The notes below the pieces were generated by a model. The model made no database searches and had not been told where the DNA came from. It saw only the letters and a program-made list of their open reading frames with translations. Below are positions 1 through 33,146 of a stretch of DNA of 64,000 nt, piece by piece. Positions within the stretch are counted from its first letter, which is position 1, and every line of letters begins with the position of its first letter. This DNA is from Vitrella brassicaformis CCMP3155 (lineage: Eukaryota > Protista > Chromerida), in the NCBI GenBank assembly GCA_001179505.1, contig CDMY01000500.1, forward strand, positions 1 through 64,000, read 5' to 3'. The translations under genes were made by a program, and so were the position numbers.

Positions 1-335
1 CCATGTATGGCATCATGAAGGGTGGTCAACACAGATCTCACTTCGGTGATGGCTGATAAGATCGTGTCTCCTCAGAATGCTTTCCTTGTCTTTCCTTGTC
101 TTCTCCTCTCTCTCTCCGTTGCACAGCAATCTACCCTAGCTCACAAGCTCGCAGTGGTTCGTCTTGCCAAGCTGGCAATCCTGACAGCAAGCTCCAGCGT
201 GCCCCTGCTCAGCTCAAGTACGCGGCAATGAGACCACAAACCTGCCGTATAAGTAAGCAAACGAACACACGACGGGCGCACTGCCCTTGTACAGGCAGAT
301 ACATGCGACGAGCGCATCGCATCCTCATGTGCTCT

Positions 336-370
<35 letters not shown>

Positions 371-812
371 CTTGTCGCTCAATGCGCTGATTGTCGGAGC
401 GTGCGGGCGTATGATCCATGTTTACCCATGTTTGCCAGTCAATCAATCAATCAGCCAGTCAGTCAGTCAGCCCAAATGTTTTTCAATCTCGCCAACCAGC
501 ATGCTATGTACACGGGACGGGTGGGTGACTTCTATGCAATATGTACAAGTCTGAGTGTCCTCCCCCCACCGCCTTCCGGCACACAAAGAGATCCGTCCAT
601 GGGCCGTCTGCTCCCTCCCTCCCCGTGTGTGTGTGTGCTGGGGGAAGGTTGTGTGGTCGAGAGTGACTGCCCCTCCACCGAGTCGTGTGACGGCGTGACT
701 TCGATGTGCCAGCCGTGGCTTCAGCTCAACAACCAGGGGCCCGTCTGTGTGCCCACACGCTCACGCGAACCTGGTAAGTCCGTGTGTGTGTGAGCGACTG
801 AGCCATGCATCC

Positions 813-845
<33 letters not shown>

Positions 846-1963
846 TGTGGCTCTTTCATGCAGTTCGTGTGCCGTCTCACTGTGTGGGCCGTGAGTGCGG
901 GGAGGCCTGGTACACTGTCAGCGGACAGCACTGGAAGGATCAGCACATCACTTTCGACGTAAGCCCGCAAACAGCACAGCACAGCGCCTGACGCAGACAC
1001 ACAGCCACACAAGAAAGGGATTCGTTCAGACGCACAGCGGCCCCTCAACCCCCACAATCGACCGCAGCACCAAATGGCGCGTGTGGCTCGGTATCCCATC
1101 CCTGATCACACCACAGACGTGTAGACCCATGTGTGTGTGTGTGCGTGGGGGATCAGGTGAGGCGCTGCACCAGTGGAACCACCGCGACAACCTCGGGACG
1201 CTCTGCATGAACGTCCTCGCAAGGCCGGCTGGTATGTGGCTGAGCGTGGACACACACGTCTGCACCCCTCTGTGTGTGTGTGTGTGTGTGTGTGCAGTTG
1301 CCTGTCCGGCGTTCCCCTTCTCCACACTCGACAACGGCACTCTCCAGGGCGTCGTTGCCATCAACCACACGTACGCTGCAGCCACACACACACACACACT
1401 CTGTGTGCCCCCCATGTCCCTCTCTCTCTCTCTCTCTGTGTGTATGTGTGTGTGCGTCAGCTCCTCTGACCGCTCCTTCATGGCGGGGGACACCGTGTCT
1501 GTGGCGTGCGACACACAGAGGGGATACCAGGCTAAACCAGGGTCGGTGGAGCATCTTGCAATCCATGCAGACGCTCACTCACTGATTGCATCTCTCTGTG
1601 TGTGTGGGTGTTTTGTTTGTGTGCACAGTCATGGTGGGCAGGAGGACCTGTTGTGTCGCTTCCGGGCCGACTACCGCACCGTCAAGTGGGACGACATCCA
1701 TATTCGATGCGCCGGTAAGCAGCCTCTCTCTCTCTCTCTCTCTCTGAGCACACTCACACACATGCATTGGTTGCCTGTTTAGAATCCACAATCGAGCCGT
1801 CATGCTCGCGCGACGAGCAGTGCCGCTGGCCCACACCTTTCTGCCACCCTGACAAGGGCACCTGTGTCGGTGAGTGAGGTGGCCTCTCTCTCTCCCTCTG
1901 CGTGTGTGTGTATGTGTGTGTTCGGTGTGTGCAGAGTGTGTGTCATCGTCATCGAGTGGCTGA
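1..1963 (+). CDS. Multi-exon Cys-rich extracellular protein with a Sushi/CCP-like module and C-x-x-D-x-x-C type Cys-rich modules; 5' end outside the window
   Basis: Phase-compatible GT-AG exons give ...CVVESDCPSTESCDGVTSMCQP... VACPAFPFSTLDNG...FMAGDTVSVACDTQRGY...EDLLCRFRADYRTVKWDDIHIRC (Sushi-like 4-Cys spacing), then SCSRDEQCRWPTPFCHPDKGTCVECVSSSSSG*. Stop TGA at 1961-1963. Confidence 0.65.
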
Positions 1964-1997
1964 CGAACTTCGTGGCTGTTGATGGGGGGTGACGAAC

Positions 1998-2385
1998 GAG
2001 AGATCTGCACGAACACAACAACGAAGATGCCGCTGTTTGCAGCATGTAGTGGCTTCTCCTGCCTCTCTGACTGCCACCCTACCCTGCAGTGAGTGGCTTG
2101 AGAGCTCCAGGGGCTTCGGCTCCCTTCGCCGATCTGCGAGCTTGGGCTGCAGGCAGCAGGCCCCGCTCTCTCTCGTGTTTTGCGACAGCGGGGCGTTGCA
2201 GGGTGTGTGGGAGATGCCCAAAGAGCTGTCGTGATGTCATCGATCGCACGCGCTTTGCCACTTCTCTCTGAGTGACGCTGATCTGACGCATTGAGGTGAG
2301 AGAGGGTGGGCAGGAGGGGCTGATGGCATCAGCAATGACAGTCTGTTCGACCTCTGTGTGTTTGTCTCAGATTTCCGGCACTTTT
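1998..2385. repeat. Diverged direct copy of 5622-6015 (spliced 5' leader/promoter module of the 4.5-5.5 kb gene family)
   Basis: Shared long blocks such as GTGTGTGGGAGATGCCCAAAGAGCTGTCGTGATGTCATCGATCG and AGATTTCCGGCACTTTT; minus-strand splice donors and acceptors are retained in both copies. Confidence 0.9.
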
Positions 2386-2545
2386 ATGGCGTCCAGCAAC
2401 AGAGCGACAGTCAAAGGCAGCCGAGGAGCCAACTGAGGTACTGCAAGCGAAAGACAAGCCACTCGGAGGCTCACAGATCGATGAGGCGACACTCATCGCA
2501 TTCACTGATATGATGTTCGTCCTGTGTTTGTTTGCAGGTGTGCAG

Positions 2546-3829
2546 ATGTCGGCTGCTGCTCGTGAAGGAGCTGCTGCCTCTACCGACGATCCATCTTCAT
2601 CTGCTGCGTCGGCTGCTGCCAATGGTAAGCAACACTGTCACTGCAAAATGGCACAATCATGCAGGCACGCAGCTGTGTGTGTGTGTGTGTGTGATTGTGT
2701 TGTAGGTGCCAGCAGTGCATCGTCACAGCAGCAGCAGCTCCACCACCACCAGGACACCACTCTCAGCGGCGTGTTGGGCGTCGCGACGTTGATGCCGAGG
2801 ATCGCCCAACACGTGACGAGCTACTCACAGCTGGCCTACTTCCGCCTCATCGACATCGACCGCCGGCCGCCCATCTCCCCTGTGCGGGCTGTGTCCCTGA
2901 CGCCTGACGTCGTGCTGCCCATCCTGATGCGGTTGCTGCCTATTGTGGTGGCGTCACTCGGCCTTTGTGTGTTGGTGGAGGTGCCCATCCCCCAGCTCAG
3001 CCAGGGTGTGGCCGTCACGGTGGCCCTGACCAGGGCCCTCATCGAACAGCTTAGCCGGCGGCTGTGGATTGGAGAGGGGCGGCAAGTGGGCCAGATGGAA
3101 ACCTGTGCTGGAGATGCTGTATGTGCTGAGAGGCAAGAGGCCACTGGTGCTGGGTGATGACAACTTCGGTGTCTTCGGCAGCCGGGCGGCCTTCATGAGT
3201 GAGACGGAGGCGGTCCGCCAGTGGAAGATACTCAGCTCGAGGGCCACTTTGATTACTATCAGAGACACCTGATGGACGGCGATAAGAATTTCTGCTGCGG
3301 CATTCGCTCAACCTACTATGTCCCCACCCTCCTCAGCTCGGCCAGCCCCCTCTTTCGTCATGCACCATTCGACCTCACCGACCCGCACACACAGCTGGCC
3401 GGCGGGGCGTACCCCAACTACACGTCCATGGTGGCCTTCGAGCTGTTCCGCTGGCTGATCACCAGCGGCCACATCAAGCGGATCAGAGCCTGGGCGACTC
3501 ACCGTCGTGATTCTGCTGCATCCCGGCGTGTGAGTGAGCTGCTCGCGGCCTCTCCCAGCGATGCGGGGCAGTGGGGGGCGACGGTGGTTGACACGAAGAG
3601 GGAGAGTGGATGGCGTTATCGGCTGGTGGTGCTTGGCAGTGAGGCGATGGGCGAGGGGCAGGTGGCAGCTGTTCTGCTGGCAGATGGGGTGGGAGACTAT
3701 CGCTCTGTTGAGATCTTCACGACCGAGTCGGCGCCCCACGACCAGACTCGCACTGTCGTGATGAGAGTGCTGGGGTTTCGCCTGGGGAACACGGTGTTGT
3801 GGCGCTTCCCCGGCTGCACGTATGACTAG
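2546..3829 (+). pseudogene. Lineage-specific hypothetical family member, apparently interrupted by two frameshifts
   Basis: ATG 2546, intron ~2626-2705. Protein-like sequence moves from ORF 2510-3157 (...LSRRLW) to ORF 3069-3272 (LERGGKWARWKPVLEMLYVLRG...QWKILS) to ORF 3221-3829 (LEGHFDYY...VEIFTTES...). The first frame has TGA at 3155-3157. Confidence 0.55.
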
Positions 3830-23439: not shown

Positions 23440-24955
23440 CTACTGCATCTGCATGACGAACATCCGCCGCCCACTCGCCGAGGTGACCGTCTCGATGCCG
23501 ATACGGCGCAGCAAACATTCCTCGCAGAAGCATGGCTCCTGCACACATGAGAAAACAACACAACACAACACCACACAAGAGCACACACCCACAGATGTGA
23601 TGCGCGGGGGCGGGGTGACTGGCCAGGCGTATCTCTCACCTGCTGTGCGGGATACTCGGCGTTCATGAGTGTGTCGGTCAGGTTGTACTGGTCGAGGATG
23701 GGACGGGCAGCCTCCACAGCGACGGGATGGCGAGCGGCGATGGCCGTGGCGCCCTCCACTGTGCTCTCCGTCGTGTATATGGCCACATGTCCGTTGCCGA
23801 CCTGACGCGCACACCAATGGGACACACACACATAGATATGGGGCGGCACGGCACACCGCAGCTTCCACTCACTCACCGAAATGAAACTGTTGACGGTGTC
23901 GCCGTGTTTCAGCCCCTTGAGCATGATGATTCGCCGCAGGCCATCGTCAGCGCCCCAACGGTAGCTGAGAGACAAGCAGGAGACTCCATACCTACGCATC
24001 GATCCATCTCAGTCAGTGTTCTGCACCGCACCGACCTGTCGTGATAGTCCACCGCCGTGTATCCCTCCAACCTGTCCGTCAGGAGCGAACGGAAACGTTC
24101 GTCCCTCTGACCGACACACCAGACGCAACACTCACTTCTGGTGAGAACTCGGTGGTGAGTACGGATCGTGGGGGATATATGTGTGTGCCCACCTTGTTGA
24201 GGTCTTCGCTAACGACCACGGTCTCCCGCACCCCCTCCCCCGCTTGCTTCCCGCAGCTGTTGATGAGGTGCCACACCAGCATGGCGCTGAAGTGGGGAAA
24301 CGTCAGCGTGCTCTGTACCGTCCGCACGGGCGGATCCTCTGGGTTGTAGCTGGCCCGATACATGTGGTTCACGCACATCTCGCTGAGCTGCACGACGTGG
24401 AATCGCAGTCCGAGGATGCTGTAGTTGCCTTCTCCGTCGCTGCGCTGCAGTGCCATGCTCCTTCCCCGGTGCGTCAGCTGGTCTCCGATGATGCTGTATG
24501 CCGCCATGGCGAGCGGCAGGCGGTTCGTCGACGGGGCGGGGCATGATGACACGATGAGACGTTTCTGCTGTGGAGGGGTGATGCGGTAGATGTTGGCCAT
24601 GCGTATGAACGACGCAATGACGCTCCACTCATACGTGCCCTGCTCAAGCCTAAGAGGTGCAAAGACGCACAGAAACGTAGATCAATGGATCCTTGGGCAC
24701 GAACGGTAGTGTCTGTTGGACTTACATATCAGCAGAATTCGATAGCCACCCCGCGTCATCCTCACCGGCACCCTTGATCTCAAGCAGGCCATCGAGAGAG
24801 TGGCGAGCGAGGGGGGTATTGATGCGCTCTATGACACGCGCCATTGGAACCTTCTTTCCCCGGGCCCTTGCGAGCTTTGAAGCGATCATCGGTGTCTTCC
24901 TTCCCGTCTCCATTTCTTCTTCCGGAGCTCTCTGTGGGGCATTCCCTGCCTGCAT
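23440..24955 (-). CDS. Lineage-specific hypothetical protein, intron-containing paralogue of 4470-5495
   Basis: Spliced exons: ...MLEQGTYEWSVIASFIRMANIYRITP...LAMAAYSIIGDQLTHRG...RIIMLKG...VGNGHVAIYTTE...; at least four GT-AG introns. Confidence 0.75.
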
Positions 24956-25058
24956 TCCCTATTCTCATTGCAAGTTTCATCCTTTCCTCTGACAACCATT
25001 CCCTATCCTTTCTCGGAGCGCCGATTGCCGCTTTATCCCTCTACTATCGTCAGCTGCA

Positions 25059-28000
25059 ATGAAGCGCTTTCTGATCCTGATTATCCTCTCACTCAGCCTG
25101 AGCGTCCAGTCTGCATCCACTTCTCAGCTGGGAGCACAACATGCCGGGGCCTCCTTCCCTTCTGAGACCACTCATCGAATCGTCGAGAACCTGGATGACG
25201 CTGCCACTGCAAAGCGGCTCCGGGATGAGTTCCGTCAGCTACCATCATTGCTGCAGCTCGTCAATCAGACGTCAGCTAAATCACTGCAGAATGCCACTGA
25301 CGACAGGTGGTCGGCGCTGGCGAGGATACTCCCTACTTCTGCGGTCCATGACACCATCAGTCGGCTGATATACATGGTAAAGGCCCTCAGAGACCTTATC
25401 CCGTCGAAGGCTAAGCCTCCCGTGAATGAATCGCATGTGCCCTACGCCCCTTCTTTTGACCGAAAGAACATCCCCTACTACAATCCCCTGAAGCACGAGG
25501 TCTCTCGTGCGCCCTCGATTACACCGACCTTCCCGCTGTATAGAGAAGGTGCGGCACAAGCCAAAGCTCAGAAACCGAAAGCTGGCTATCGGCCGGCAGA
25601 GGAGCATGTTTTCCCCGAGACAATCGCACCTGCAAAAATCGAGGAGCAAGTGCCTGTGGAAGTGCGGATCCCGCTGCCCTATCGGCCACCGACAGAACCC
25701 ACAATGCCGCTCCGCAACTTCTCTGATTTCAACCTGGGTGGCCAGCAGGTATGGCGAGCTCTTGCAGGTAGAGACATGGCTCCTCACGAGCTCGAAAGGA
25801 TTCCGCCGGCTCCTTACCCCTCTGAGAGACGTCCTCCCTCTGTCCCCCAAAAGATGCTTCCAGAGGAGCCCCCAGTGTCACCCTATATAGGGGAAATGAA
25901 ACCGAATGGGTATGCTACAGAGGCAATGAAAGAGGGACTACTGTCTTTGAGTGTGTGATGCTGGTCTGTTGGGCTGATCTGTTGAACGCAGGACGCGACA
26001 GCCTGTCGCGCCTGCCCCTTATCACGTCCACATCCATGTGAAGATACCCATGCCTCCGACCGCCCCAACCACTCCGCCTGCGCCAGTAGTTCCTAAGAAG
26101 AAGGCAGAGAGCAGTACTGCGTCACCGGCAGAAGAGGAGGAGACGACAGAAGAAGAGCTGGAGGAGGTGACAGGCCATCGCCCGTCAAGAGAGAAGCCCC
26201 TTGAGCCAGTGACGGGCCATCCCCCACCAGAAGAGGAGGAAACGACGGAAGAAGAGCTGGAAGAGGTGACAGGCCATCGCCCGTCAACAGAGAAGCCCCC
26301 TGAGCCAGTGACGGGCCACACGCCAACCCGAGCCCCTGCGCGCGGCAAATTAGAAGAAGGGGAGTGGATTCCAATCGAGAAAGAGAGGGCCCTGGAGAAG
26401 GTGACAGGCCATCCTCCTCCTTCGCCGCCTGTGACACCAAAGGAAGAAAGAGAACAACGACTCGAAGAGACACGGGGCCATCGGCCGCTAGAACAAAGGC
26501 ATGAGGGCGAGAAACAGCTCGAGAAGACAGAAGGGCATTCAAAGGAGAGGAAGGCTTTTCGTCGCGTGCCTGTGCCATGGTATGAGCCACGTGTCAGCTC
26601 ACCAGGCTTTCGACAGCCAGAAGCGCCAGCAAAAGAGCTCCCACCGATGCCCCCTGAAGTTGCTGAGAAGAAAAAAATCGAAGAGGAACTTGCACCAGAG
26701 GGAGAATCTTACTTGGACGAGCTCGACTGGATTCCTGTCAGCCATCCAATGTTTGAAAAAGAGTCACCTGAGCCCATGTCTGTTCGTGAGGTTCATCCAT
26801 TTCCAGCCGGAGCACCACCCGAAGCGCCTATAGCAGCCATGAGAAGAGGAGAGGAGCTTGAAGAAGAGTCACAGCCACGAGAGCGAGTTCGAGTCGGGAG
26901 GAAAGAAATCGCCCGCCGGGTCCATGCAGCAAAGCCAAAACCTCCGCCGAGGCGGACAAAGACACCAGTCCCTCTGGACATGGGTGCCACTCTGAAAGAG
27001 TCCCTCGAAAGATGTACCGGCATTACAGAGGAGTTGAGAAAGGAAAAAGCGGACATTCACGAGGAGGTAACCACAAAAAGCAATGTCAATGCCATGTGAT
27101 TGCCATTTGCATGCAATTCAGCTGATTCGATCCATCCGCACGGAAAACTATAATCGCTTCCTCAAAACCCTGTGCACACTGGTGAGAGTCCATTCAATGA
27201 ACTGTCCTCGCGAAGATCATGTGTTCTGTCAATTTCATCTCAGAAATCTCCAGAACTCAACTACAAGACGAGAGTGAGCGAATCGCGCGATGATTCGGCA
27301 CGCTTGCGACCGTCTTGTGCGTGTTGTTGCCAGGCGGGAGGAGACACTGCTTTGACCACTGCGATGAAGCTGCGGCTTGATGCGGAAAGGTTTGTAGAAG
27401 CCTTGTTGGAGGGCGGAGCCGACATAAACCTTCCCAGAGGGGTAACACAACATGCGGCACGCCAACCAGCTTACGTCTGTCGTTTTCGTCAGGATGGAAC
27501 GACGCCTTTGATGCGTGCTGTACTCGGCCATAATCCAGGCATCGTGCAGCTTGTCCTCGACAAGAAGGCTGACATGGATATTCAAGACGCGGCAAGTCGA
27601 ATCTCACAGTACTGCAGGATTTAAGGCATGAGCTTTCATGTCTTGTCTGGACAGAATGGCAAAAGTGCGTTGATGCATGCCGTCGAGGGCGGTGACGATG
27701 ATTTAATGCGCTTGCTGGTCAAGTCGGGCGCAGACCTCACAAAGAAGACAAAGGTAGAGATGTTTTTACCCATGTATACTCAGCATGTGCCACTGTGTCT
27801 CTCCAGAAAGGAGATACGGCGCTTCATCTTGCTATCCGTAGGGGAAGTGTTCCCGCCCTTCAAGCTTTCATAGCGGCTGTCGAGGACAGAGAGAAAGCAA
27901 CGGGCCCTACCGATGTCGGTGGTGAGAAAGGAAAAGAAGAGCCAAGGCCACCACCTCACAAAAGCAGCGACGAGGGAGTGGAGGAGAAGCCGACAGAGAT

Positions 28001-31000
28001 GACCGAGGGACACACGCCAACCCGACGCCCTGCGCGCGGCAAATTGGAAGAAGGGGAGTGGATTCCTATCGAGAAAGAGAAGCCCCCTGCAAGTCGCGAG
28101 GAGGAACCATCGACTGGCAAGAACGCCGCGACACCATCAGCGACTACGTCCGAGGGCGGCGCGGCATCTTTCGTGGAGCCTGAGGACGATGTGAGCTTCA
28201 GCAGCCTCGTAGATGCTTCTACAGAGACGCGAGTTTTCGTGCAGAGACATCGCGAAAGACGAGATGATGAGAGCCAGAGCGCGGCATCGCCTCTGCTAGA
28301 TATCACTGCGCCGAATCTGGTCAGGAGCAAGAGAGGAAAACGGGAAAAATCGATTAGTGCTTTGGACGTTTTGTGCTGTGCGTATGCTCGCTAGGTGTCC
28401 GACACGCCTCTTTCGACTGCATTAACTTATGCAGTTGAGCGAACGCAGAATTTTTCTGTTCTCTTTTACCGTGTTTTGTCTTTCTCAGGAAGATTCATTT
28501 GCACGGCTTTTGCTTGAGAAGGGCGTGGCGCCAAACCCCGAAAACCTGCACAAATACAATCCTCACGGTGTTTCACCAATTATCAACGCAGCATCCAATA
28601 ACTTTGCCGAAGATATTATGATGAAAGTCATTAAGGTGAAAAAACACACGACTGTCAGCAGGAATGTGTCTTGATGCTTTATCGATGCCTCTTTGTGTGC
28701 CGCGCTCAGCTGGCAGAAAAGGGGCGAGATGCTTTCCTGTGCACGGCCAAGGACGATAAAGGAAGGGGTCTCATATGGTACGCGGCAAGCCTGATGCGCC
28801 TTTTGTTGTCTCATCGGTTCTTGCTCTAAGTGGGAGGCGCACAATGGCCATGTACGAGCTATCAAGGAGCTCTTGAGCCATTTCAAGGCTGTAGTCGAAG
28901 CCAGACTGCCAGGATCCAAGTTCTGCGATCCACACAAACCAGATGAAGCAGGTACTCGATTGAGTCACTCAGTTCCGCCAACAGTCTGACATCGTGTTTC
29001 TTGGCAGGCGACACACCTCTGCTGGCGGCCATGGAGAGCGGCAACAACCTCGGTGACCTGGAGGGCATCAAGACACTTTATACCTGTCTCAACCCAGTGG
29101 ATGGAGACACAGCTATTCTCGATGCTCTCCAACAAACAAAGGACTTCGACATCATCAGCAGACTGATTTCGCGCAGGCCTTCGCCGGTAGAACCCACATT
29201 CATGCGATCGATATAGTGGCGCTCGGCTCGGTCTCCTTGTGTGTCTGTTTGTTTGTTTGTTTGTTTGTTTGTTTGCTGGCGCAGAGCTTCGACCTCCTCC
29301 GTTTCGACACACCGAACGATCTCTCTGAGACTGCCCTGCCGAAGTCTGTCGCCCTACAGAAGAAGAACAGCTTTCGACTGCTCCTCCGAGTTGCAGTCGA
29401 GGGCGAATTCTTCAAGGAAATCGACAAGGCCCTTTACACAGCGGCATGTAAGCAATCCGTACGAGCCTCGAATGGGCAAATGCCAATTTTTGGTTTGCAG
29501 TGATGATGAGTGACGATGAGGTCGACGCAATAATCGAGGCTCGTCCCAAGGCCGTCGAAAACGTGCTGTCGATGCTTCAGTACAAGTAAGAACTGTATCG
29601 TCTGCAGAAGGCCTTGATTGGTGGGTTGCCCGCTGCAGGGGTCCTCGAGATAGTAATGCAGCTCTCCACATCCTCGACATGCTGCCATCCAATTTTCCGA
29701 AATTCACAGATCCGAAAGATGCAAATCCCCTGCGGGTAAGCCTTCTCAATGAACAGTCACGTATGTTTCTCGGATAGCCATGCGTATTTCTGTCTGTATA
29801 GAGGGCGACACTTGCGTCTGAGCTGGCAGTTGTGCGCAAGATGACCGCCCCTAGCCACTACCCCTTCCTCACGCCGCGGCACTTGAAGCTCACATTGCAA
29901 GCGGTGATTGAACAAGTACGAAATCCACATATCTTTCTCCAGCAAAGAGCGATCGTGGAGAGGAGAGATAACAACACGTCAATATCGCACCGAGATGCAG
30001 AAGCCTTGAGCAGCACCAACTCGTCTGAAGCCCCGCCTAGTGAACCTGATTCGATACGGCGGCTGATGGCTTCACAGGGTATTCTCGCGGCGGTGCGGCG
30101 AGCAAACATCTCTGAGACGGCCAAGGAGATGAAGAAGAGGGGCGACGACAAGTATGCGTCCACCGATGCAGCCGACAGCGCCAGCCGCAACAAGCGAAGG
30201 ACGGCGATCCTTGCGACTCTTTTCAAGTAAATGACATGATGATTCGAAAATGGCTGTCAAGGCAATGCTGTCATTGTTGTGCAGCTGTCCGGTTGTCGAT
30301 GTGGATTCGTTTCTTAAGCGCTTCACTTTGATCGTGACCATAATCTCGTCGGTGTCTTATGCTTTGTGGCTTGTTGTGATTTCACTGCTCGTCTACATGA
30401 CTTCCTGGCCCCACATCGTAAGCAAAGCCATATCGCAGCCTGTGGGCTCGTATGGATGGATAGACGGATGGACGCGTACATCCATCCTCGTGGTCTTGCT
30501 GCATCCAGGATATTATAAGCCTTCTGCCTGAGCCATCCGACTACAGCTTTAGTAAAGGTGACCAAGGGCAAGGACAGAGCTAAGACAGACGTGAGCACCG
30601 GGTGTGTCTTGGCTCTTCACAGCGTCATGGATATCCGTCCTCTCGTTTGTCGGCCACCAAACGACTGCCTTTGCATGGTAAGACAGGAGACATGGTCCAG
30701 TCAAGTAGTCGCGTTTTGTATTTCTGTCAACCCAATCAGGGATGTGACGACTATGGAGATGATTATTCACTGGGCGATGATCGTCATGCGCCTTGTGAGC
30801 CTCTTCGGCGTCATCGCATACCTCTTCTACGTGCAGCGGTTCCTCCACGCCATCTTTCCCTTGGTGCTGGCCGTCCTGGTGGCAATGATTCGGGGCGTCC
30901 AGTCCTTTTGCTTCAACACAAAGGACAACCGAAGCATGGGCACAGGTGAGAAGGATCCACGGCTCCTGAGCCTCAGCCAAATTACGCCGACAATGTTAAT

Positions 31001-32372
31001 GTGCCCGATGGATGGCAACAGATCTGCTAAGGCCAGGCACAGAAGCCGAGGATTTCTGGGCGGACGACTTGGAGAACCTGATTGCCCAACCCGAGTACCA
31101 CGACAAACCCGAGCACCTCCGCGTGAGTAGTGCAAGCTGGTCTCCTTTTTTGTTTGCATCACTTGTTGCTGGTTGCTTTCCTCCTCAGGACTACTACGAG
31201 GGACTGAAGCTGGCGACTCGGGTGACGATGCCTCAGTACCTGACCGTATGTGTCGTCTCGGGCACGGCGGCCTTCATCTTCTCGATGGCTTCGTGCATCC
31301 TTCGGCTGGCATTCATGAACTATCTGGAGTTCTACCGATTCACTCGGGCTTATGAGCTCACCAGAGACTACCTGTGAGACAGAACCCATACAGACATCCG
31401 CTTGCATTGTCTCGTGTGTATTGCAGCTGGTTGGCCGTGATTGCGGAGCTGCTGCTGATTCTCAACACGTGGATCATCGCTATGGATTTCATGAAGCCCC
31501 TGAGTCTGCTTATTCTGCAGTCGTCGTCTCACTGGCGGCTGCTTAAGCACTTCATGCGTGATTATAACCACAGGGGGCTCATCGAGGTCAGCGACGAGGA
31601 GTTCAACCAGACACTCACCGACTGGCTGGACGCACGGTGGGCGGGACACACGCTTATTCGCGCGTCCATCTGTGCGCCGGCCATTTCATGCTTGCTGCCT
31701 GCCAGGCAAGACATACTTGACAAGTTGGAGCTCCGCCGCAATGCCTTGCGGGCGCCTTCTCCTCTATATCAGCAATCCTACTCAGTAAGTGCATCCTTGC
31801 GTACACGTCTTTTCTCGAACATCCTCTTTGTGTGCGGTGTGTTTGATGTGTCAGTCCTCTTGATATGGCAGGCGGCCTTTGCGGTGTACTGCTTCTTGTC
31901 GGGCGACACCGGCTATAAGTACCTGTCAACCATACTGACGGAGGAGCTGAGCTTCTACTTGTATATCCTGGCTGTGAGCGGCATCCTCTTGTGCATCGTG
32001 ACCATCATATTCGGCGGACTCGCAAACGATGTAAGCAAGGCAGAACGGGATCTGTATGTTGCGTTGTTTTTCGTTTGTGGATGGCCATCTGTCACCGATA
32101 AGGTGGCGTCCAAGCACTGGTTCCGTCTGAATGACCTGCTGCGCCGCCTGCCACACACAGCCGAGAGAAGAAAGAGCCTCGAGCGGGCATCCATGTCTCT
32201 CAAACCTGAAGACCCTGCCTTCACGGTATACCAAGCCGCTGGAGTATCCCCTCCCAACCCCATCTGTGTGCTCTTGTCTGTGCAGGTGTGGGGCATCACA
32301 CTGACTCCCATGGTGTCTTTCGTCCTTACCTTCCTCCTGGTGACGTGCATCATCCTTGGATCACTTGTGTAA
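25059..32372 (+). CDS. Large multi-exon protein: hydrophobic N-terminus, Pro/Glu-rich repeats, ankyrin repeats, C-terminal multi-TM domain resembling GRL/DUF3537 7TM ion channels
   Basis: Phase-compatible joins from ORF 25059 (intron 25910-25991) through ORF 26038 (donor ~27067) into ANK exons (GGDTALTTAMK, GTTPLMRAV, GKSALMHAV, GDTALHLAI, GVSPIINAA, GDTPLLAAM). About 7-8 hydrophobic segments from ~30290, ending ...GGLAND|KVASKHW...KPEDPAFT|VWGITLTPMVSFVLTFLLVTCIILGSLV*. ANK is confident; the GRL call and single-gene status are inferred. Confidence 0.7.
26129..26330 (+). repeat. In-frame 99-nt (33-aa) tandem repeat, 2 copies, plus further VTGH(R/P)P motifs
   Basis: EEEETTEEELEEVTGHRPSREKPLEPVTGHPPP / EEEETTEEELEEVTGHRPSTEKPPEPVTGHTPT. 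Confidence 0.9.
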
Positions 32373-33146
32373 GCATTCACAGGCATATTCTCGATTTTTC
32401 AGCATCATGATTGCGTGTATGCGCTGCAGCTATGCCGACAAGAGCGTTATGGACCGATTTGCACCGCAGGAAGACAGGCTGGCAATGCCCCAGGATACGG
32501 CATCGAGGCTTCAGCTAAACGAGGGAATGATAACGCATGCGGCACTCAGACGGCCGGGGACAGACGTGTTGGATCTGCCCACTGACGACAAAAGGAGAAG
32601 AGACCGTGTCAGTGAGTCTCTCCCAGAGATCAACGCGACCGTAAACAAGACATACCAGCACGCCGGCAACCGGACGTCGCTGTCCCATGGCACGCTATTT
32701 GAGTGGCTGCTGGGGCGCCCGTCGAGCTTGTCTGCATCCCTTATCAGCCTGAAACCGTATATACGGCATGACTCCGCCAGCGATGAGTCACAGGAACTTC
32801 AAGGCGAGATGAATAGCAAAAGATAGGGCAGTGGCGACCAGCGTACTGAGGATGGAAGGGCGACAAGGAAGGAGTGATGCATGTAGGCGGGAGGAGACAT
32901 AGATTGGTGACTGTCTTTGGTACAGTACTCTGTGGCTTGAAGCGATTGTTTGCGTCCGGCCGCAGTCCGGCGCTTAGCGAGTGAAGGTAGCATCTATGTG
33001 ATTGGCTTTTGGACATCATTGCAGTGTGTCGTGAGAGACCTTGAGTGCGTCTTTTTTTTAACTGTTTTCCAACGGCTGCCGTACGCGGTACTGTGGCTGT
33101 GTGTGTGTGTGTGCTGGGGCGGGAATCTCCGAGACTGCGTGTCGAG

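What the first reader, a model, noticed from the sequence alone, without database searches (positions are those of the whole stretch)
27340..32372. Ankyrin repeats fused to a gustatory-receptor-like (GRL/7TMIC) membrane domain
Seen in sequence: at least six ankyrin-type repeats are followed in the same splice chain by ~7-8 hydrophobic segments. The C-terminus, ILLCIVTIIFGGLANDKVASKHW-(helical loop)-KPEDPAFTVWGITLTPMVSFVLTFLLVTCIILGSLV*, follows the TM6 / loop / TM7a-7b layout of insect Gr/Or and plant DUF3537 proteins (cf. GITV.GF.LDR). There is no TRP-type pore loop or TRP box. Established: ANK plus channel is the TRPA/TRPN architecture, and GRL homologues have been reported in unicellular eukaryotes including Vitrella (from memory; verify whether this locus is one of them). 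Inference: a chemosensory-type tetrameric channel with a TRP-like cytosolic ankyrin module.
Basis: partly seen in the sequence, partly recalled or inferred. Interest (0 to 1): 0.8.

Follow-up and report, generated by a model that had tools for sequence, protein, structure and literature searches.

The report
Ankyrin-repeat membrane protein gene, frame-broken transcript
This alga (Vitrella brassicaformis) gene joins ankyrin repeats to a many-pass membrane domain on one spliced RNA, but that RNA breaks the reading frame twice, and the suggested kinship with insect taste and smell receptor channels could be neither shown nor excluded.

Summary
One 6,352-nt RNA contig matches a 29-exon chain (window 24896-33059) base for base. 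It links a signal-peptide-like start, a Pro/Glu-rich region, about 10 ankyrin repeats, 8-9 hydrophobic helices and a 133-aa tail.

Two junctions in the assembled mRNA (28777|28831 and 31784|31855) shift the frame. The RNA therefore carries three ORFs (1044, 699 and 249 aa), not one fusion protein.

An intact paralogue, CEM20858.1 (1165 aa, ankyrin repeats plus the same membrane domain), lies elsewhere in the Vitrella brassicaformis genome. No other relatives were found. Neither gene is one of the published VbraGRL1-6.

Membership of the GRL/7TMIC family is not shown. Pfam, PDB-profile and hhalign comparisons with VbraGRL1 were negative, and the AlphaFold models were too poor to use (pLDDT 43-44). 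What supports it:
- protein-language-model neighbours (DUF3537, 7tm_7);
- long intracellular and short extracellular loops;
- a long-helix / short-helix / hairpin / final-helix pattern;
- an FTVWG motif.

I put a 7TMIC-like channel at about 0.4. The scan also noted this stretch in an overlapping window (s1-201793).

The parts
24896..25058 (+). 5' UTR of the transcript
   Evidence: The first 163 nt of RNA contig L013 map here without a gap.
25059..25909 (+). Exon 1: ATG and a signal-peptide-like start (MKRFLILIILSLSLSVQS), then a Pro-rich region
   Evidence: ORF list, sequence. The gene called on L013 at 164-3298 starts at this ATG.
25992..27066 (+). Exon 2: Glu/Pro-rich low-complexity region with a tandem 99-nt repeat (26129-26325) and one copy of an 80-nt duplicated segment (26313-26392)
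   Evidence: No Pfam domain.
27122..29735 (+). Exons 3-16: about 10 ankyrin repeats. Exons: 27122-27181, 27244-27273 (30-nt micro-exon), 27334-27441, 27493-27591, 27655-27753, 27807-28319, 28395-28433 (39-nt micro-exon), 28489-28635, 28710-28777, 28831-28951, 29008-29186, 29285-29447, 29501-29585, 29639-29735
   Evidence: Joints and record arithmetic, exact match to L013, Pfam Ank families.
27592..27654 (+). GC-AG intron, confirmed in RNA
   Evidence: Joint 27590>27654 with 1 ambiguous base; splice-site table.
27880..28319 (+). Low-complexity insertion inside an ankyrin repeat. It holds the second copy of the 80-nt duplicate (28007-28086, 91% identical to 26313-26392) and is absent from the paralogue
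28778..28830 (+). 53-nt GT-AG intron used in the RNA: first frame break. It ends the 1044-aa ORF 16 codons later and creates the ATG of the 699-aa ORF. The in-frame alternative would be a GC donor at 28785 with an acceptor before 28837 (52 nt), which gives 'LIWYA|AHNGHV'. The paralogue has no intron here
29802..30226 (+). Exon 17: helical and charged linker between the ankyrin repeats and the first membrane helix
30285..32368 (+). Exons 18-28: membrane domain, helices A, w, B-H. Exons: 30285-30417, 30509-30557, 30623-30677, 30740-30945, 31022-31122, 31189-31373, 31427-31636, 31706-31784, 31855-32030, 32103-32225, 32286-32368
   Evidence: Joints, match to L013, hydropathy, 43-46% identity to the paralogue.
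31785..31854 (+). 70-nt GT-AG intron: second frame break, giving 'QQSYSSS*'. It falls in the helix that corresponds to the paralogue's helix F. A possible alternative acceptor before 31872 (87 nt) would keep the frame
   Evidence: P0001 ends ...QQSYSSS. L013 matches. An X1 contig ends exactly at 31872 and depth steps from 7.5 to 12.6. The paralogue's intron here is phase 1.
32369..32429 (+).
   Evidence: Joint 32368>32430 in X1 and X6. P0003 and P0005 read ...GSLVYADKS....
32430..32826 (+). Exon 29: 133-aa hydrophilic C-terminal tail and the true stop (32824-32826)
   Evidence: No Pfam hit.
32827..33059 (+). 3' UTR covered by the RNA contig

Best explanation
Window 24896-33059 holds a 29-exon gene of Vitrella brassicaformis. 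It is one of only two members of a lineage-restricted family. The family's ancestral architecture, kept intact in the paralogue CEM20858.1, is about 10 N-terminal ankyrin repeats, a charged linker and a roughly 470-aa membrane domain.

The most likely mechanism (inferred, not shown) is an oligomeric ion-channel-type membrane protein. Its last seven helices (B-H) would be arranged as in 7TMIC channels (insect Or/Gr, GRL, DUF3537): long cytosolic extensions of the 4th-6th helices plus a short 'TM7a' helix form an anchor domain, a hairpin (FTVWG) leads into a pore-lining last helix, and the ankyrin repeats act as a cytosolic docking or gating module. One or two extra helices (A, w) precede this core.

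The window copy is a derived and probably decaying or only weakly productive copy. It has gained a 640-aa N-terminal extension, a low-complexity insertion and a C-terminal tail. Its predominant mRNA breaks the frame twice, so that mRNA cannot encode the fusion protein.
For: SHOWN
- One RNA: contig L013 (6,352 nt) equals my exon chain with 0 mismatches. A second assembly (JGI L014) carries the same ORFs.
- Ankyrin repeats.
- Paralogue with one uninterrupted ankyrin-plus-membrane ORF, and conserved intron positions in the membrane part.
- Only two loci in the genome. The exhaustive search, run with the C-terminal 313 residues only, found no other relative among 1.84e9 representative proteins. 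None in metagenome contigs.
- Frame breaks.

SUPPORTING THE 7TMIC-LIKE READING
- Language-model neighbours of the paralogue's membrane domain: top scores 0.95. The named hits are almost all 7TMIC families: DUF3537 (7 hits, 0.92), 7tm_7 (20 hits, 0.90), Trehalose_recp and DUF267.
- Both AF2 runs give the same helix pattern: 52-54 aa, 25+37 aa, 50-51 aa, a 14-aa helix, a beta-hairpin, then a 28-aa helix. This matches the long TM4-6 and split TM7 described for 7TMICs.
- With B-H mapped to TM1-7, the loops are IL 68/70/60 aa against EL 4/23/33 aa. In the window protein K+R counts are 27 inside against 6 outside (my count on the sequences, segments as).
- 'FTVWGITLT' resembles 'FTVLGISIT' of PfunGRL1 at the same place.
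- The paralogue has SYFITAFLL, 3 of the 4 TM7-motif positions.
Against: - No Pfam hit for the membrane domain even at E<=10.
- Six-frame DUF3537 and 7tm_7 searches of the genome do not touch either locus.
- Profile against PDB sequences: 0 hits.
- hhalign against VbraGRL1 plus its relative: probability 0.09%. BLASTP: nothing.
- 8 strong and 1 weak hydrophobic segments, not 7.
- The TM7-motif-like residues lie in the N-terminal half of the last helix, and the window copy keeps only 1 of 4 (plus Y>F).
- The window protein has a 133-aa tail after the last helix.
- AF2 models have pLDDT 43-44, and Foldseek and VIA-align gave only helical noise.
- The N-terminal two thirds of the window's membrane domain had no usable language-model hit.
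- The signal-peptide-like start conflicts with cytosolic ankyrin repeats.
- Long stop-free ORFs downstream of both frame breaks argue that the copy is not long dead.
Confidence: 0.4

Rival explanations
1. The membrane domain is an orphan polytopic fold unrelated to 7TMICs, for example a transporter, a membrane enzyme or a membrane-anchored scaffold, to which ankyrin repeats recruit partners. The 7TMIC-like features are generic properties of helical membrane proteins.
For: All sequence and profile tests against 7TMIC families were negative. There are 8-9 helices. His-containing motifs are conserved between the paralogues (SWPHID, GHQ, IIHW, R..HA). AF2 does not recover a 7TMIC fold. The second language-model query gave nothing. 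The tool's own heuristic says the best named family is probably wrong.
Against: Named language-model neighbours are almost only 7TMIC families rather than a mix of transporters and GPCRs. The helix-length pattern, hairpin, loop asymmetry and FTVxG motif all fit one specific family. 7TMIC families are known to lack mutual sequence similarity.
Confidence: 0.38
2. The window copy is a fully functional gene. Minor in-frame isoforms (GC donor 28785 with acceptor 28837; acceptor 31872 or retention of 31785-31854) make a protein of about 1,980-2,010 aa, and the frame-broken isoform is regulated unproductive splicing or assembler bias.
For: In-frame alternatives exist and give single ORFs of 1979 or 2008 aa. 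GC-AG splicing is used elsewhere in this gene with the same GCG|GCAAG context. An X1 contig ends exactly at the 31872 acceptor and depth rises from 7.5 to 12.6. ORFs stay open for 699 and 258 codons after the breaks, with 43-46% identity to the paralogue throughout.
Against: The Logan contig (L013) and the JGI contig (L014) carry the same frame-broken ORFs, and run X1 shows eleven of the same joints but has no coverage at the first break. No in-frame junction was directly seen. The 87-nt variant leaves the helix that corresponds to paralogue helix F only about 11-13 residues long. The paralogue's intron phase suggests a 1-nt loss at the end of exon 25.
Confidence: 0.3
3. It is a TRP-like or other six-helix P-loop cation channel with N-terminal ankyrin repeats (TRPA/TRPN type).
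For: Ankyrin repeats followed by a membrane domain is the TRPA/TRPN/TRPV layout (established knowledge). Helices A, w, B, C, D and E could be counted as six.
Against: No Ion_trans or any TRP family hit at E<=10. The loop between the 4th and 5th helices is 68 aa and acidic. The D-E loop is only 23 aa, too short for a pore helix plus filter. Three more conserved helices follow.
Confidence: 0.03
4. The ankyrin and membrane parts are two neighbouring genes merged by read-through or by the assembler.
For: The assembled RNA holds three separate ORFs. The tool warns that a contig across two genes does not prove one transcript.
Against: The 699-aa ORF itself contains ankyrin repeats and membrane helices A-E in one frame. 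The paralogue has the whole architecture in one 1165-aa ORF, and on a 3,999-nt transcript contig. All 28 introns are spliced in one contig.
Confidence: 0.03

Closest known systems
7TMIC superfamily (insect Or/Gr, animal and protist GRL, plant DUF3537), including the published VbraGRL1-6
   Same: A core of seven helices (B-H) with long intracellular and short extracellular loops. Long helices before a short helix, a hairpin and a last helix (TM7a/TM7b-like). An FTVxG hairpin motif. Language-model neighbours from DUF3537 and 7tm_7. A short C-terminus in the paralogue. It occurs in an alga already known to have six GRLs.
   Different: No detectable sequence or profile similarity, even to VbraGRL1 (which itself carries a 7tm_7 hit). 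One or two extra N-terminal helices. About 10 ankyrin repeats: among the roughly 8.4 million papers searched, only one review holds both '7TMIC' and 'ankyrin' (I did not open it). The TM7 motif is poorly kept. The window copy has a 133-aa tail. The fold is not verified.
TRPA/TRPN/TRPV channels (ankyrin repeats plus a six-helix pore domain)
   Same: An N-terminal ankyrin array followed by a multi-pass membrane domain. The ankyrin repeats plausibly act as a cytosolic docking or gating module.
   Different: No Ion_trans/TRP profile hit, no P-loop-sized pore loop, no TRP box, and 8-9 helices.
Plant ACD6/ITN1-type ankyrin-transmembrane proteins (PGG domain, PF13962); recalled from my own knowledge
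   Same: N-terminal ankyrin repeats fused to a C-terminal multi-helix membrane domain in a photosynthetic eukaryote.
   Different: No PGG hit at E<=10. The membrane domain is about four times longer.
CEM20858.1 / A0A0G4FZA7 (Vitrella brassicaformis, 'unnamed protein product')
   Same: True paralogue: 43-46% identity across the membrane domain, collinear ankyrin repeats, and shared intron positions in the membrane part.
   Different: It is intact in one ORF. It lacks the signal-peptide-like/Pro-Glu extension, the low-complexity insertion, the intron at 28778-28830 and the C-terminal tail. Its helix F is complete.

Membership tests
Ankyrin repeat (Pfam clan Ank) | 33-residue repeats that match the Ank profiles above the gathering score | tested here: met
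   Ank 38.4 bits and Ank_2 33.1 bits on exon 27328-27591. Ank_2 83 bits, E 2e-23, on the cDNA ORF. Paralogue Ank_2 E 5.6e-25.
7TMIC / GRL | Sequence or profile similarity to a known member (reciprocal BLAST / HMM; Benton 2020 criterion i) | tested here: not met
   No 7tm_7, 7tm_6, Trehalose_recp or DUF3537 hit at E<=10. Genome-wide six-frame searches miss both loci. hhalign against VbraGRL1/P0007 gives probability 0.09%. BLASTP E>1.
7TMIC / GRL | Seven transmembrane helices | tested here: inconclusive
   Kyte-Doolittle finds 8 strong segments and 1 weak one in the paralogue. Seven fit only if B-H are the core and A and w are extras or TM0. No dedicated topology predictor was available.
7TMIC / GRL | Intracellular N-terminus and extracellular C-terminus | tested here: inconclusive
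   The K/R-rich stretch before helix A, and K+R counts of 27 (C-D, E-F, G-H loops) against 6 (B-C, D-E, F-G), fit N-in/C-out with 9 helices (my count on the sequence). The signal-peptide-like start of the window gene argues the other way.
7TMIC / GRL | Intracellular loops longer than extracellular loops | tested here: met
   With B-H as TM1-7 in the paralogue: IL1 68, IL2 70, IL3 60 aa against EL1 4, EL2 23, EL3 33 aa. This is conditional on that mapping.
7TMIC / GRL | Long TM4-TM6 projecting into the cytosol (anchor domain) and a split TM7a/TM7b | tested here: inconclusive
   DSSP of both AF2 models gives helices of 52-54, 25+37 and 50-51 aa, then a 14-aa helix, a beta-hairpin and a 28-aa helix. 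At pLDDT 43-44 the three-dimensional packing cannot be judged.
7TMIC / GRL | TM7 motif (T/S)Yhhhhh(Q/K/E)(F/L/M) in the C-terminal half of TM7 | tested here: not met
   Window: SFVLTFLLV, 1 of 4 positions plus Y>F. Paralogue: SYFITAFLL, 3 of 4. Both lie in the N-terminal half of the last helix. The motif is diagnostic but not obligatory for the family.
7TMIC / GRL | Short extracellular C-terminus straight after TM7b | tested here: not met
   The window gene continues for 133 aa. The paralogue does end soon after the helix.
7TMIC / GRL | Tertiary fold superposable on Orco/Or/Gr structures | tested here: inconclusive
   Foldseek against the PDB: no match at E<=0.001; AaegOR10 at rank 29 with TMq 0.16. 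VIA-align wide: only helical-bundle noise. The models are too poor. AlphaFold DB was not available.
7TMIC / GRL | Homo- or hetero-tetramer through the anchor domain | tested here: inconclusive
   Complex prediction with 4 copies of P0004:920-1165 returned 'no answer'.
Published VbraGRL1-6 (Benton et al. 2020) | Identity with one of CEM13019.1, CEL93132.1, CEM19221.1, CEM01650.1, CEM10760.1, CEM25255.1 | tested here: not met
   The paralogue is CEM20858.1. Four peptide words from the window protein and the paralogue are absent from the paper's 176 supplementary files, while a control word from VbraGRL1 is found.
TRP / voltage-gated-like cation channels | Six-helix Ion_trans domain with a P-loop; TRP box after S6 | tested here: not met
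   No Ion_trans or TRP family at E<=10. The D-E loop is 23 aa. Three further conserved helices follow.
ACD6-type ankyrin-PGG proteins | PGG domain (PF13962) after the ankyrin repeats | tested here: not met
   No PGG hit at E<=10.

The most novel reading that the evidence does not exclude
The family (CEM20858.1 and this locus) is a true 7TMIC channel that has acquired an N-terminal ankyrin array and one or two extra helices. That would be a chemoreceptor-superfamily pore combined with a TRP-style cytosolic ankyrin module, arising in a chromerid alga and too diverged for every sequence method.
Probability: 0.35. Interest if true: 0.7.

Novelty: new variant of a known kind. Interest (0 to 1): 0.4.

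Why it matters
If the membrane domain is a 7TMIC, this would be the first member seen here with a large folded cytosolic domain. It would show that the Or/Gr-type pore can be coupled to an ankyrin module, as TRP channels are. It would also give a tractable protist protein (the intact paralogue) for asking what non-animal 7TMICs do.

If it is not a 7TMIC, it is a lineage-restricted ankyrin-membrane architecture with no relatives among the 1.84 billion representative proteins searched.

Independently, the locus is a clear case in which the genomic ORF misleads. Three in-frame, stop-free introns and a stop codon hidden in a splice donor produce a plausible but wrong C-terminus. The real mRNA is frame-broken at two junctions.

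Tried and rejected
SEARCHES THAT FOUND NOTHING
- Word-based protein searches with the C-terminal genomic ORF and with the paralogue's membrane domain. even missed the window's own protein, so this tool's blanks mean little.
- Metagenome scans by profile and by a DNA pattern.
- Pfam DUF3537 and 7tm_7 six-frame searches of the genome: no relevant hit. The DUF3537 control rang nowhere, so that blank is weak.
- Profile against PDB sequences: 0 hits.

STRUCTURE
- Two AF2 jobs: pLDDT 43 and 44.
- Foldseek against the PDB and VIA-align wide on those models gave only 14-3-3 and helical-bundle noise. I draw no conclusion from them.
- Complex prediction on a tetramer of the C-terminal 246 aa: no answer. 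This is neither for nor against.

OTHER TESTS
- Second language-model query, on the window's helices A-E: no usable hit.
- hhalign and BLASTP against VbraGRL1: negative. This was expected even for true 7TMIC relatives, so it is only weak evidence.
- Three brute-force exon-chain scripts timed out. The exon structure was solved by record and depth arithmetic instead, and then verified against L013.

IDEAS DROPPED
- Programmed -1 ribosomal frameshifting at the two breaks: no slippery heptamer at either junction.
- Plastid bipartite leader for the N-terminus: no Phe right after the predicted cleavage site. This rests on memory, is weak, and was dropped.
- A similar N-terminal extension in the paralogue: none within 2.3 kb upstream.


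Full report
**1. What is at the locus**

The window is from Vitrella brassicaformis CCMP3155. ORF listing and three-frame reading show many short exons on the + strand.

Laying public runs on 26600-32500 showed that run X6 holds one 6,352-nt contig with every intron removed, and run X1 shows eleven of the same joints. I rebuilt the exon chain from three sources:
- the listed joints;
- the record coordinates of the pieces;
- the depth per bin (depth / 61.7 x bin width = exonic bases).

This recovered a 30-nt micro-exon (27244-27273), a 39-nt micro-exon (28395-28433) and a GC-AG intron (27592-27654).

The look-up of encoding contigs then returned that very contig as L013 (Logan, ERR558152). My 29-exon string from ATG 25059 to stop 32826 is found in it with 0 mismatches. 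The 5' UTR starts at 24896 and the 3' UTR ends at 33059. All 28 introns are 51-98 nt; 27 are GT-AG and one is GC-AG.

**2. Check of the observation**

Ankyrin repeats are real (Pfam); I count about ten. They are followed on the same RNA by a roughly 190-aa charged linker and then the hydrophobic segments. So the core observation holds and is far beyond chance.

Four details are wrong.
- The 'stop' after GSLV is the taa inside the donor GT|AAGC of intron 32369-32429. The intron is spliced in X1 and X6, and the ORF continues for 133 aa (YADKS...EMNSKR*) to 32826. Database proteins P0003 and P0005, called on independent transcript assemblies, read straight through it.
- The gene begins at 25059 with MKRFLILIILSLSLSVQS. 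About 640 aa of Pro/Glu-rich sequence precede the first ankyrin repeat.
- The long genomic ORF 31374-32372 exists only because three real introns (31637-31705, 32031-32102, 32226-32285) are in frame and stop-free.
- The intron after '...QQSYS' is 70 nt, not 69 nt.

**3. The mRNA is frame-broken twice**

In L013 the ORF from the ATG stops after 1044 aa. Intron 28778-28830 (53 nt) is spliced out of frame, giving '...GRGLICGRRTMAMYELSRSS*'.

The same junction creates the ATG of a 699-aa ORF (P0001: three to four ankyrin repeats, the linker and helices A-E). That ORF ends '...QQSYSSS*' because intron 31785-31854 is 70 nt. A 249-aa ORF (P0005: helices G-H plus the tail) follows. The JGI/MMETSP assembly L014 carries the same second and third ORFs.

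In-frame alternatives exist on paper:
- GC donor at 28785 (same GCG|GCAAG context as the confirmed GC-AG intron) with an acceptor before 28837. This gives 'LIWYA|AHNGHV', which is in register with the paralogue's 'LWWAAYHGQ'.
- Acceptor before 31872 (87 nt), or retention of the 70-nt intron.

These give single ORFs of 1979 or 2008 aa. The only indirect sign of any of them is that an X1 contig ends exactly at 31872 and depth rises from 7.5 to 12.6 there.

Comparison with the paralogue adds two points. It has no intron at the first site. At the second site it has a phase-1 intron (CTT G|gtcaga...cacag|CC). The window gene would need TCAG|GTAAGT for the same phase, but DNA and RNA both read TCA|GTAAGT, which looks like a 1-nt loss at the exon end (inference). 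The helix affected, F in the paralogue, is the one segment that no longer aligns between the copies.

Against long-standing decay: 699 and 258 codons stay open after the breaks, and identity to the paralogue is 33-57% in every alignable segment.

**4. Relatives**

An exhaustive phmmer search of 1.84e9 representative proteins, using the C-terminal 313 residues, found only three proteins:
- P0001, from this locus;
- P0003, from this locus;
- P0002, which is CEM20858.1 / A0A0G4FZA7 (1165 aa).

CEM20858.1 is encoded at G000:C531 (~119.2-124.2 kb, minus strand), at 76-100% identity exon by exon. It is therefore a paralogue in the same genome, 39-46% identical to the window protein. It has about 10 ankyrin repeats and the same membrane domain in one ORF, and it ends soon after the last helix.

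A profile search of the genome finds only these two loci. A metagenome scan found nothing.

The paralogue's accession is not among VbraGRL1-6. Peptide words of both proteins are absent from that paper's supplementary sequences, while a control word is found. The published sequences, printed, have no ankyrin repeats and look unrelated.

**5. Is the membrane domain a GRL/7TMIC?**

Defining features were taken from Benton 2020, Benton & Himmel 2023 and Himmel 2023.

Negative or inconclusive results:
- No Pfam hit at E<=10.
- No PDB-sequence hit with a family profile.
- I located VbraGRL1 in the genome with a back-translated pattern. I retrieved it (P0006, which carries a precomputed 7tm_7 hit) and a relative, then ran hhalign against the family alignment: probability 0.09%. 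BLASTP found nothing.
- Two AlphaFold2 runs on the paralogue's domain, with the only possible three-row alignment, gave pLDDT 43 and 44. Foldseek and VIA-align searches with those models returned only generic helical matches. The decisive fold test therefore failed technically.
- A tetramer prediction gave no answer.

Positive indications:
- A protein-language-model search with the paralogue's domain gave top scores of 0.95 (reached about once in 100 by shuffled proteins, per the tool). Among the named neighbours nearly all are 7TMIC families: DUF3537, 7tm_7, Trehalose_recp and DUF267 mixed with 7tm_7.
- Both AF2 runs predict the same secondary structure: very long helices E (52-54 aa), F with a 25-aa N-terminal extension, and G (50-51 aa), then a 14-aa helix (RRKTSERIYLSIKP), a beta-hairpin (PLVSVWGIP) and a final 28-aa helix. 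This matches the description of long TM4-6, TM7a, hairpin and TM7b.
- With B-H as TM1-7, the intracellular loops are long and the extracellular ones short. In the window protein K+R is 27 inside against 6 outside.
- The weak segment 'w' sits where the re-entrant TM0 would be.
- 'FTVWGITLT' resembles 'FTVLGISIT' of PfunGRL1 at the equivalent place.

Counter-points:
- There are 8-9 helices.
- The TM7 motif is poor and misplaced.
- The window copy has a long tail.
- The window's helices A-E gave no language-model hit.

I put 7TMIC homology at about 0.35-0.4, an unrelated orphan fold at a similar level, and a TRP-like fold at about 0.03.

**6. Mechanism (inferred)**

The intact family member is most plausibly an oligomeric channel-type protein with three parts:
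- a cytosolic ankyrin array;
- a bundle of membrane helices;
- a cytosolic helical 'anchor' made from the extensions of E, F and G and the short helix, with the last helix lining a pore.

The window copy, as transcribed, can give at most the 1044-aa N-terminal product (signal-peptide-like start, low-complexity region, six ankyrin repeats). A full-length product needs minor isoforms to restore the frame.

The signal-peptide-like start conflicts with cytosolic ankyrin repeats and remains unexplained. If helix A crossed from outside to inside and 'w' were re-entrant, an extracellular N-terminal region would still leave the B-H core in the 7TMIC orientation.

**7. Rule compliance**

Searches used single exons, stop-free genomic stretches, database proteins (P0001-P0007) or the cDNA contig L013, always by reference. 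Exons were joined only inside local scripts, for translation, hydropathy and the identity check against L013. Read laying was given 5,901 letters.

**8. Verdict**

This is a real but mis-delimited gene. The architecture is interesting and apparently undescribed. The GRL idea is plausible but unproven, and the window copy is compromised. The paralogue CEM20858.1 is the protein to study.

Noticed in passing
window 25059-25112: The ORF starts with a textbook signal-peptide-like segment (MKRFLILIILSLSLSVQS|AST) upstream of 640 aa of Pro/Glu-rich sequence and the ankyrin repeats. This is topologically odd for ankyrin repeats. The paralogue has nothing similar within 2.3 kb upstream.
   Followed up: partly
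window 26313-26392 and 28007-28086; 26129-26325: An 80-nt coding segment (GHTPTR.PARGKLEEGEWIPIEKE) is duplicated at 91% identity, once in the N-terminal low-complexity region and once in an insertion inside an ankyrin repeat. There is also a tandem 99-nt repeat at 92% identity. This duplicate probably explains the 'goes back' joint and the G>A at 28046 in the DNA runs.
   Followed up: partly
window 27592-27654 and 28785-28836: One GC-AG intron is confirmed by RNA (GCG|GCAAGT). A second candidate GC donor with the same context sits 7 nt downstream of the GT donor actually used, and only the GC donor would keep the frame.
   Followed up: partly
window 27244-27273 and 28395-28433: Two micro-exons of 30 and 39 nt inside ankyrin repeats, both present in the RNA contig.
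   Followed up: yes
window 31637-31705, 32031-32102, 32226-32285: Three consecutive real introns are multiples of three and stop-free, so the genome shows a misleading 332-aa ORF (31374-32372) that reads through them.
   Followed up: yes
window 29233-29284: A (GTTT)n microsatellite inside intron 29187-29284. Read laying skipped it as a repeat, and the DNA contigs break there.
   Followed up: no
L015 = G000:C441:53023-56057: The VbraGRL1 gene (CEM13019.1) has a single intron. Exon 1 is at L015:817-1935, and exon 2 ends at the stop codon at L015:2496-2498. Its database entry carries a precomputed Pfam 7tm_7 hit.
   Followed up: partly
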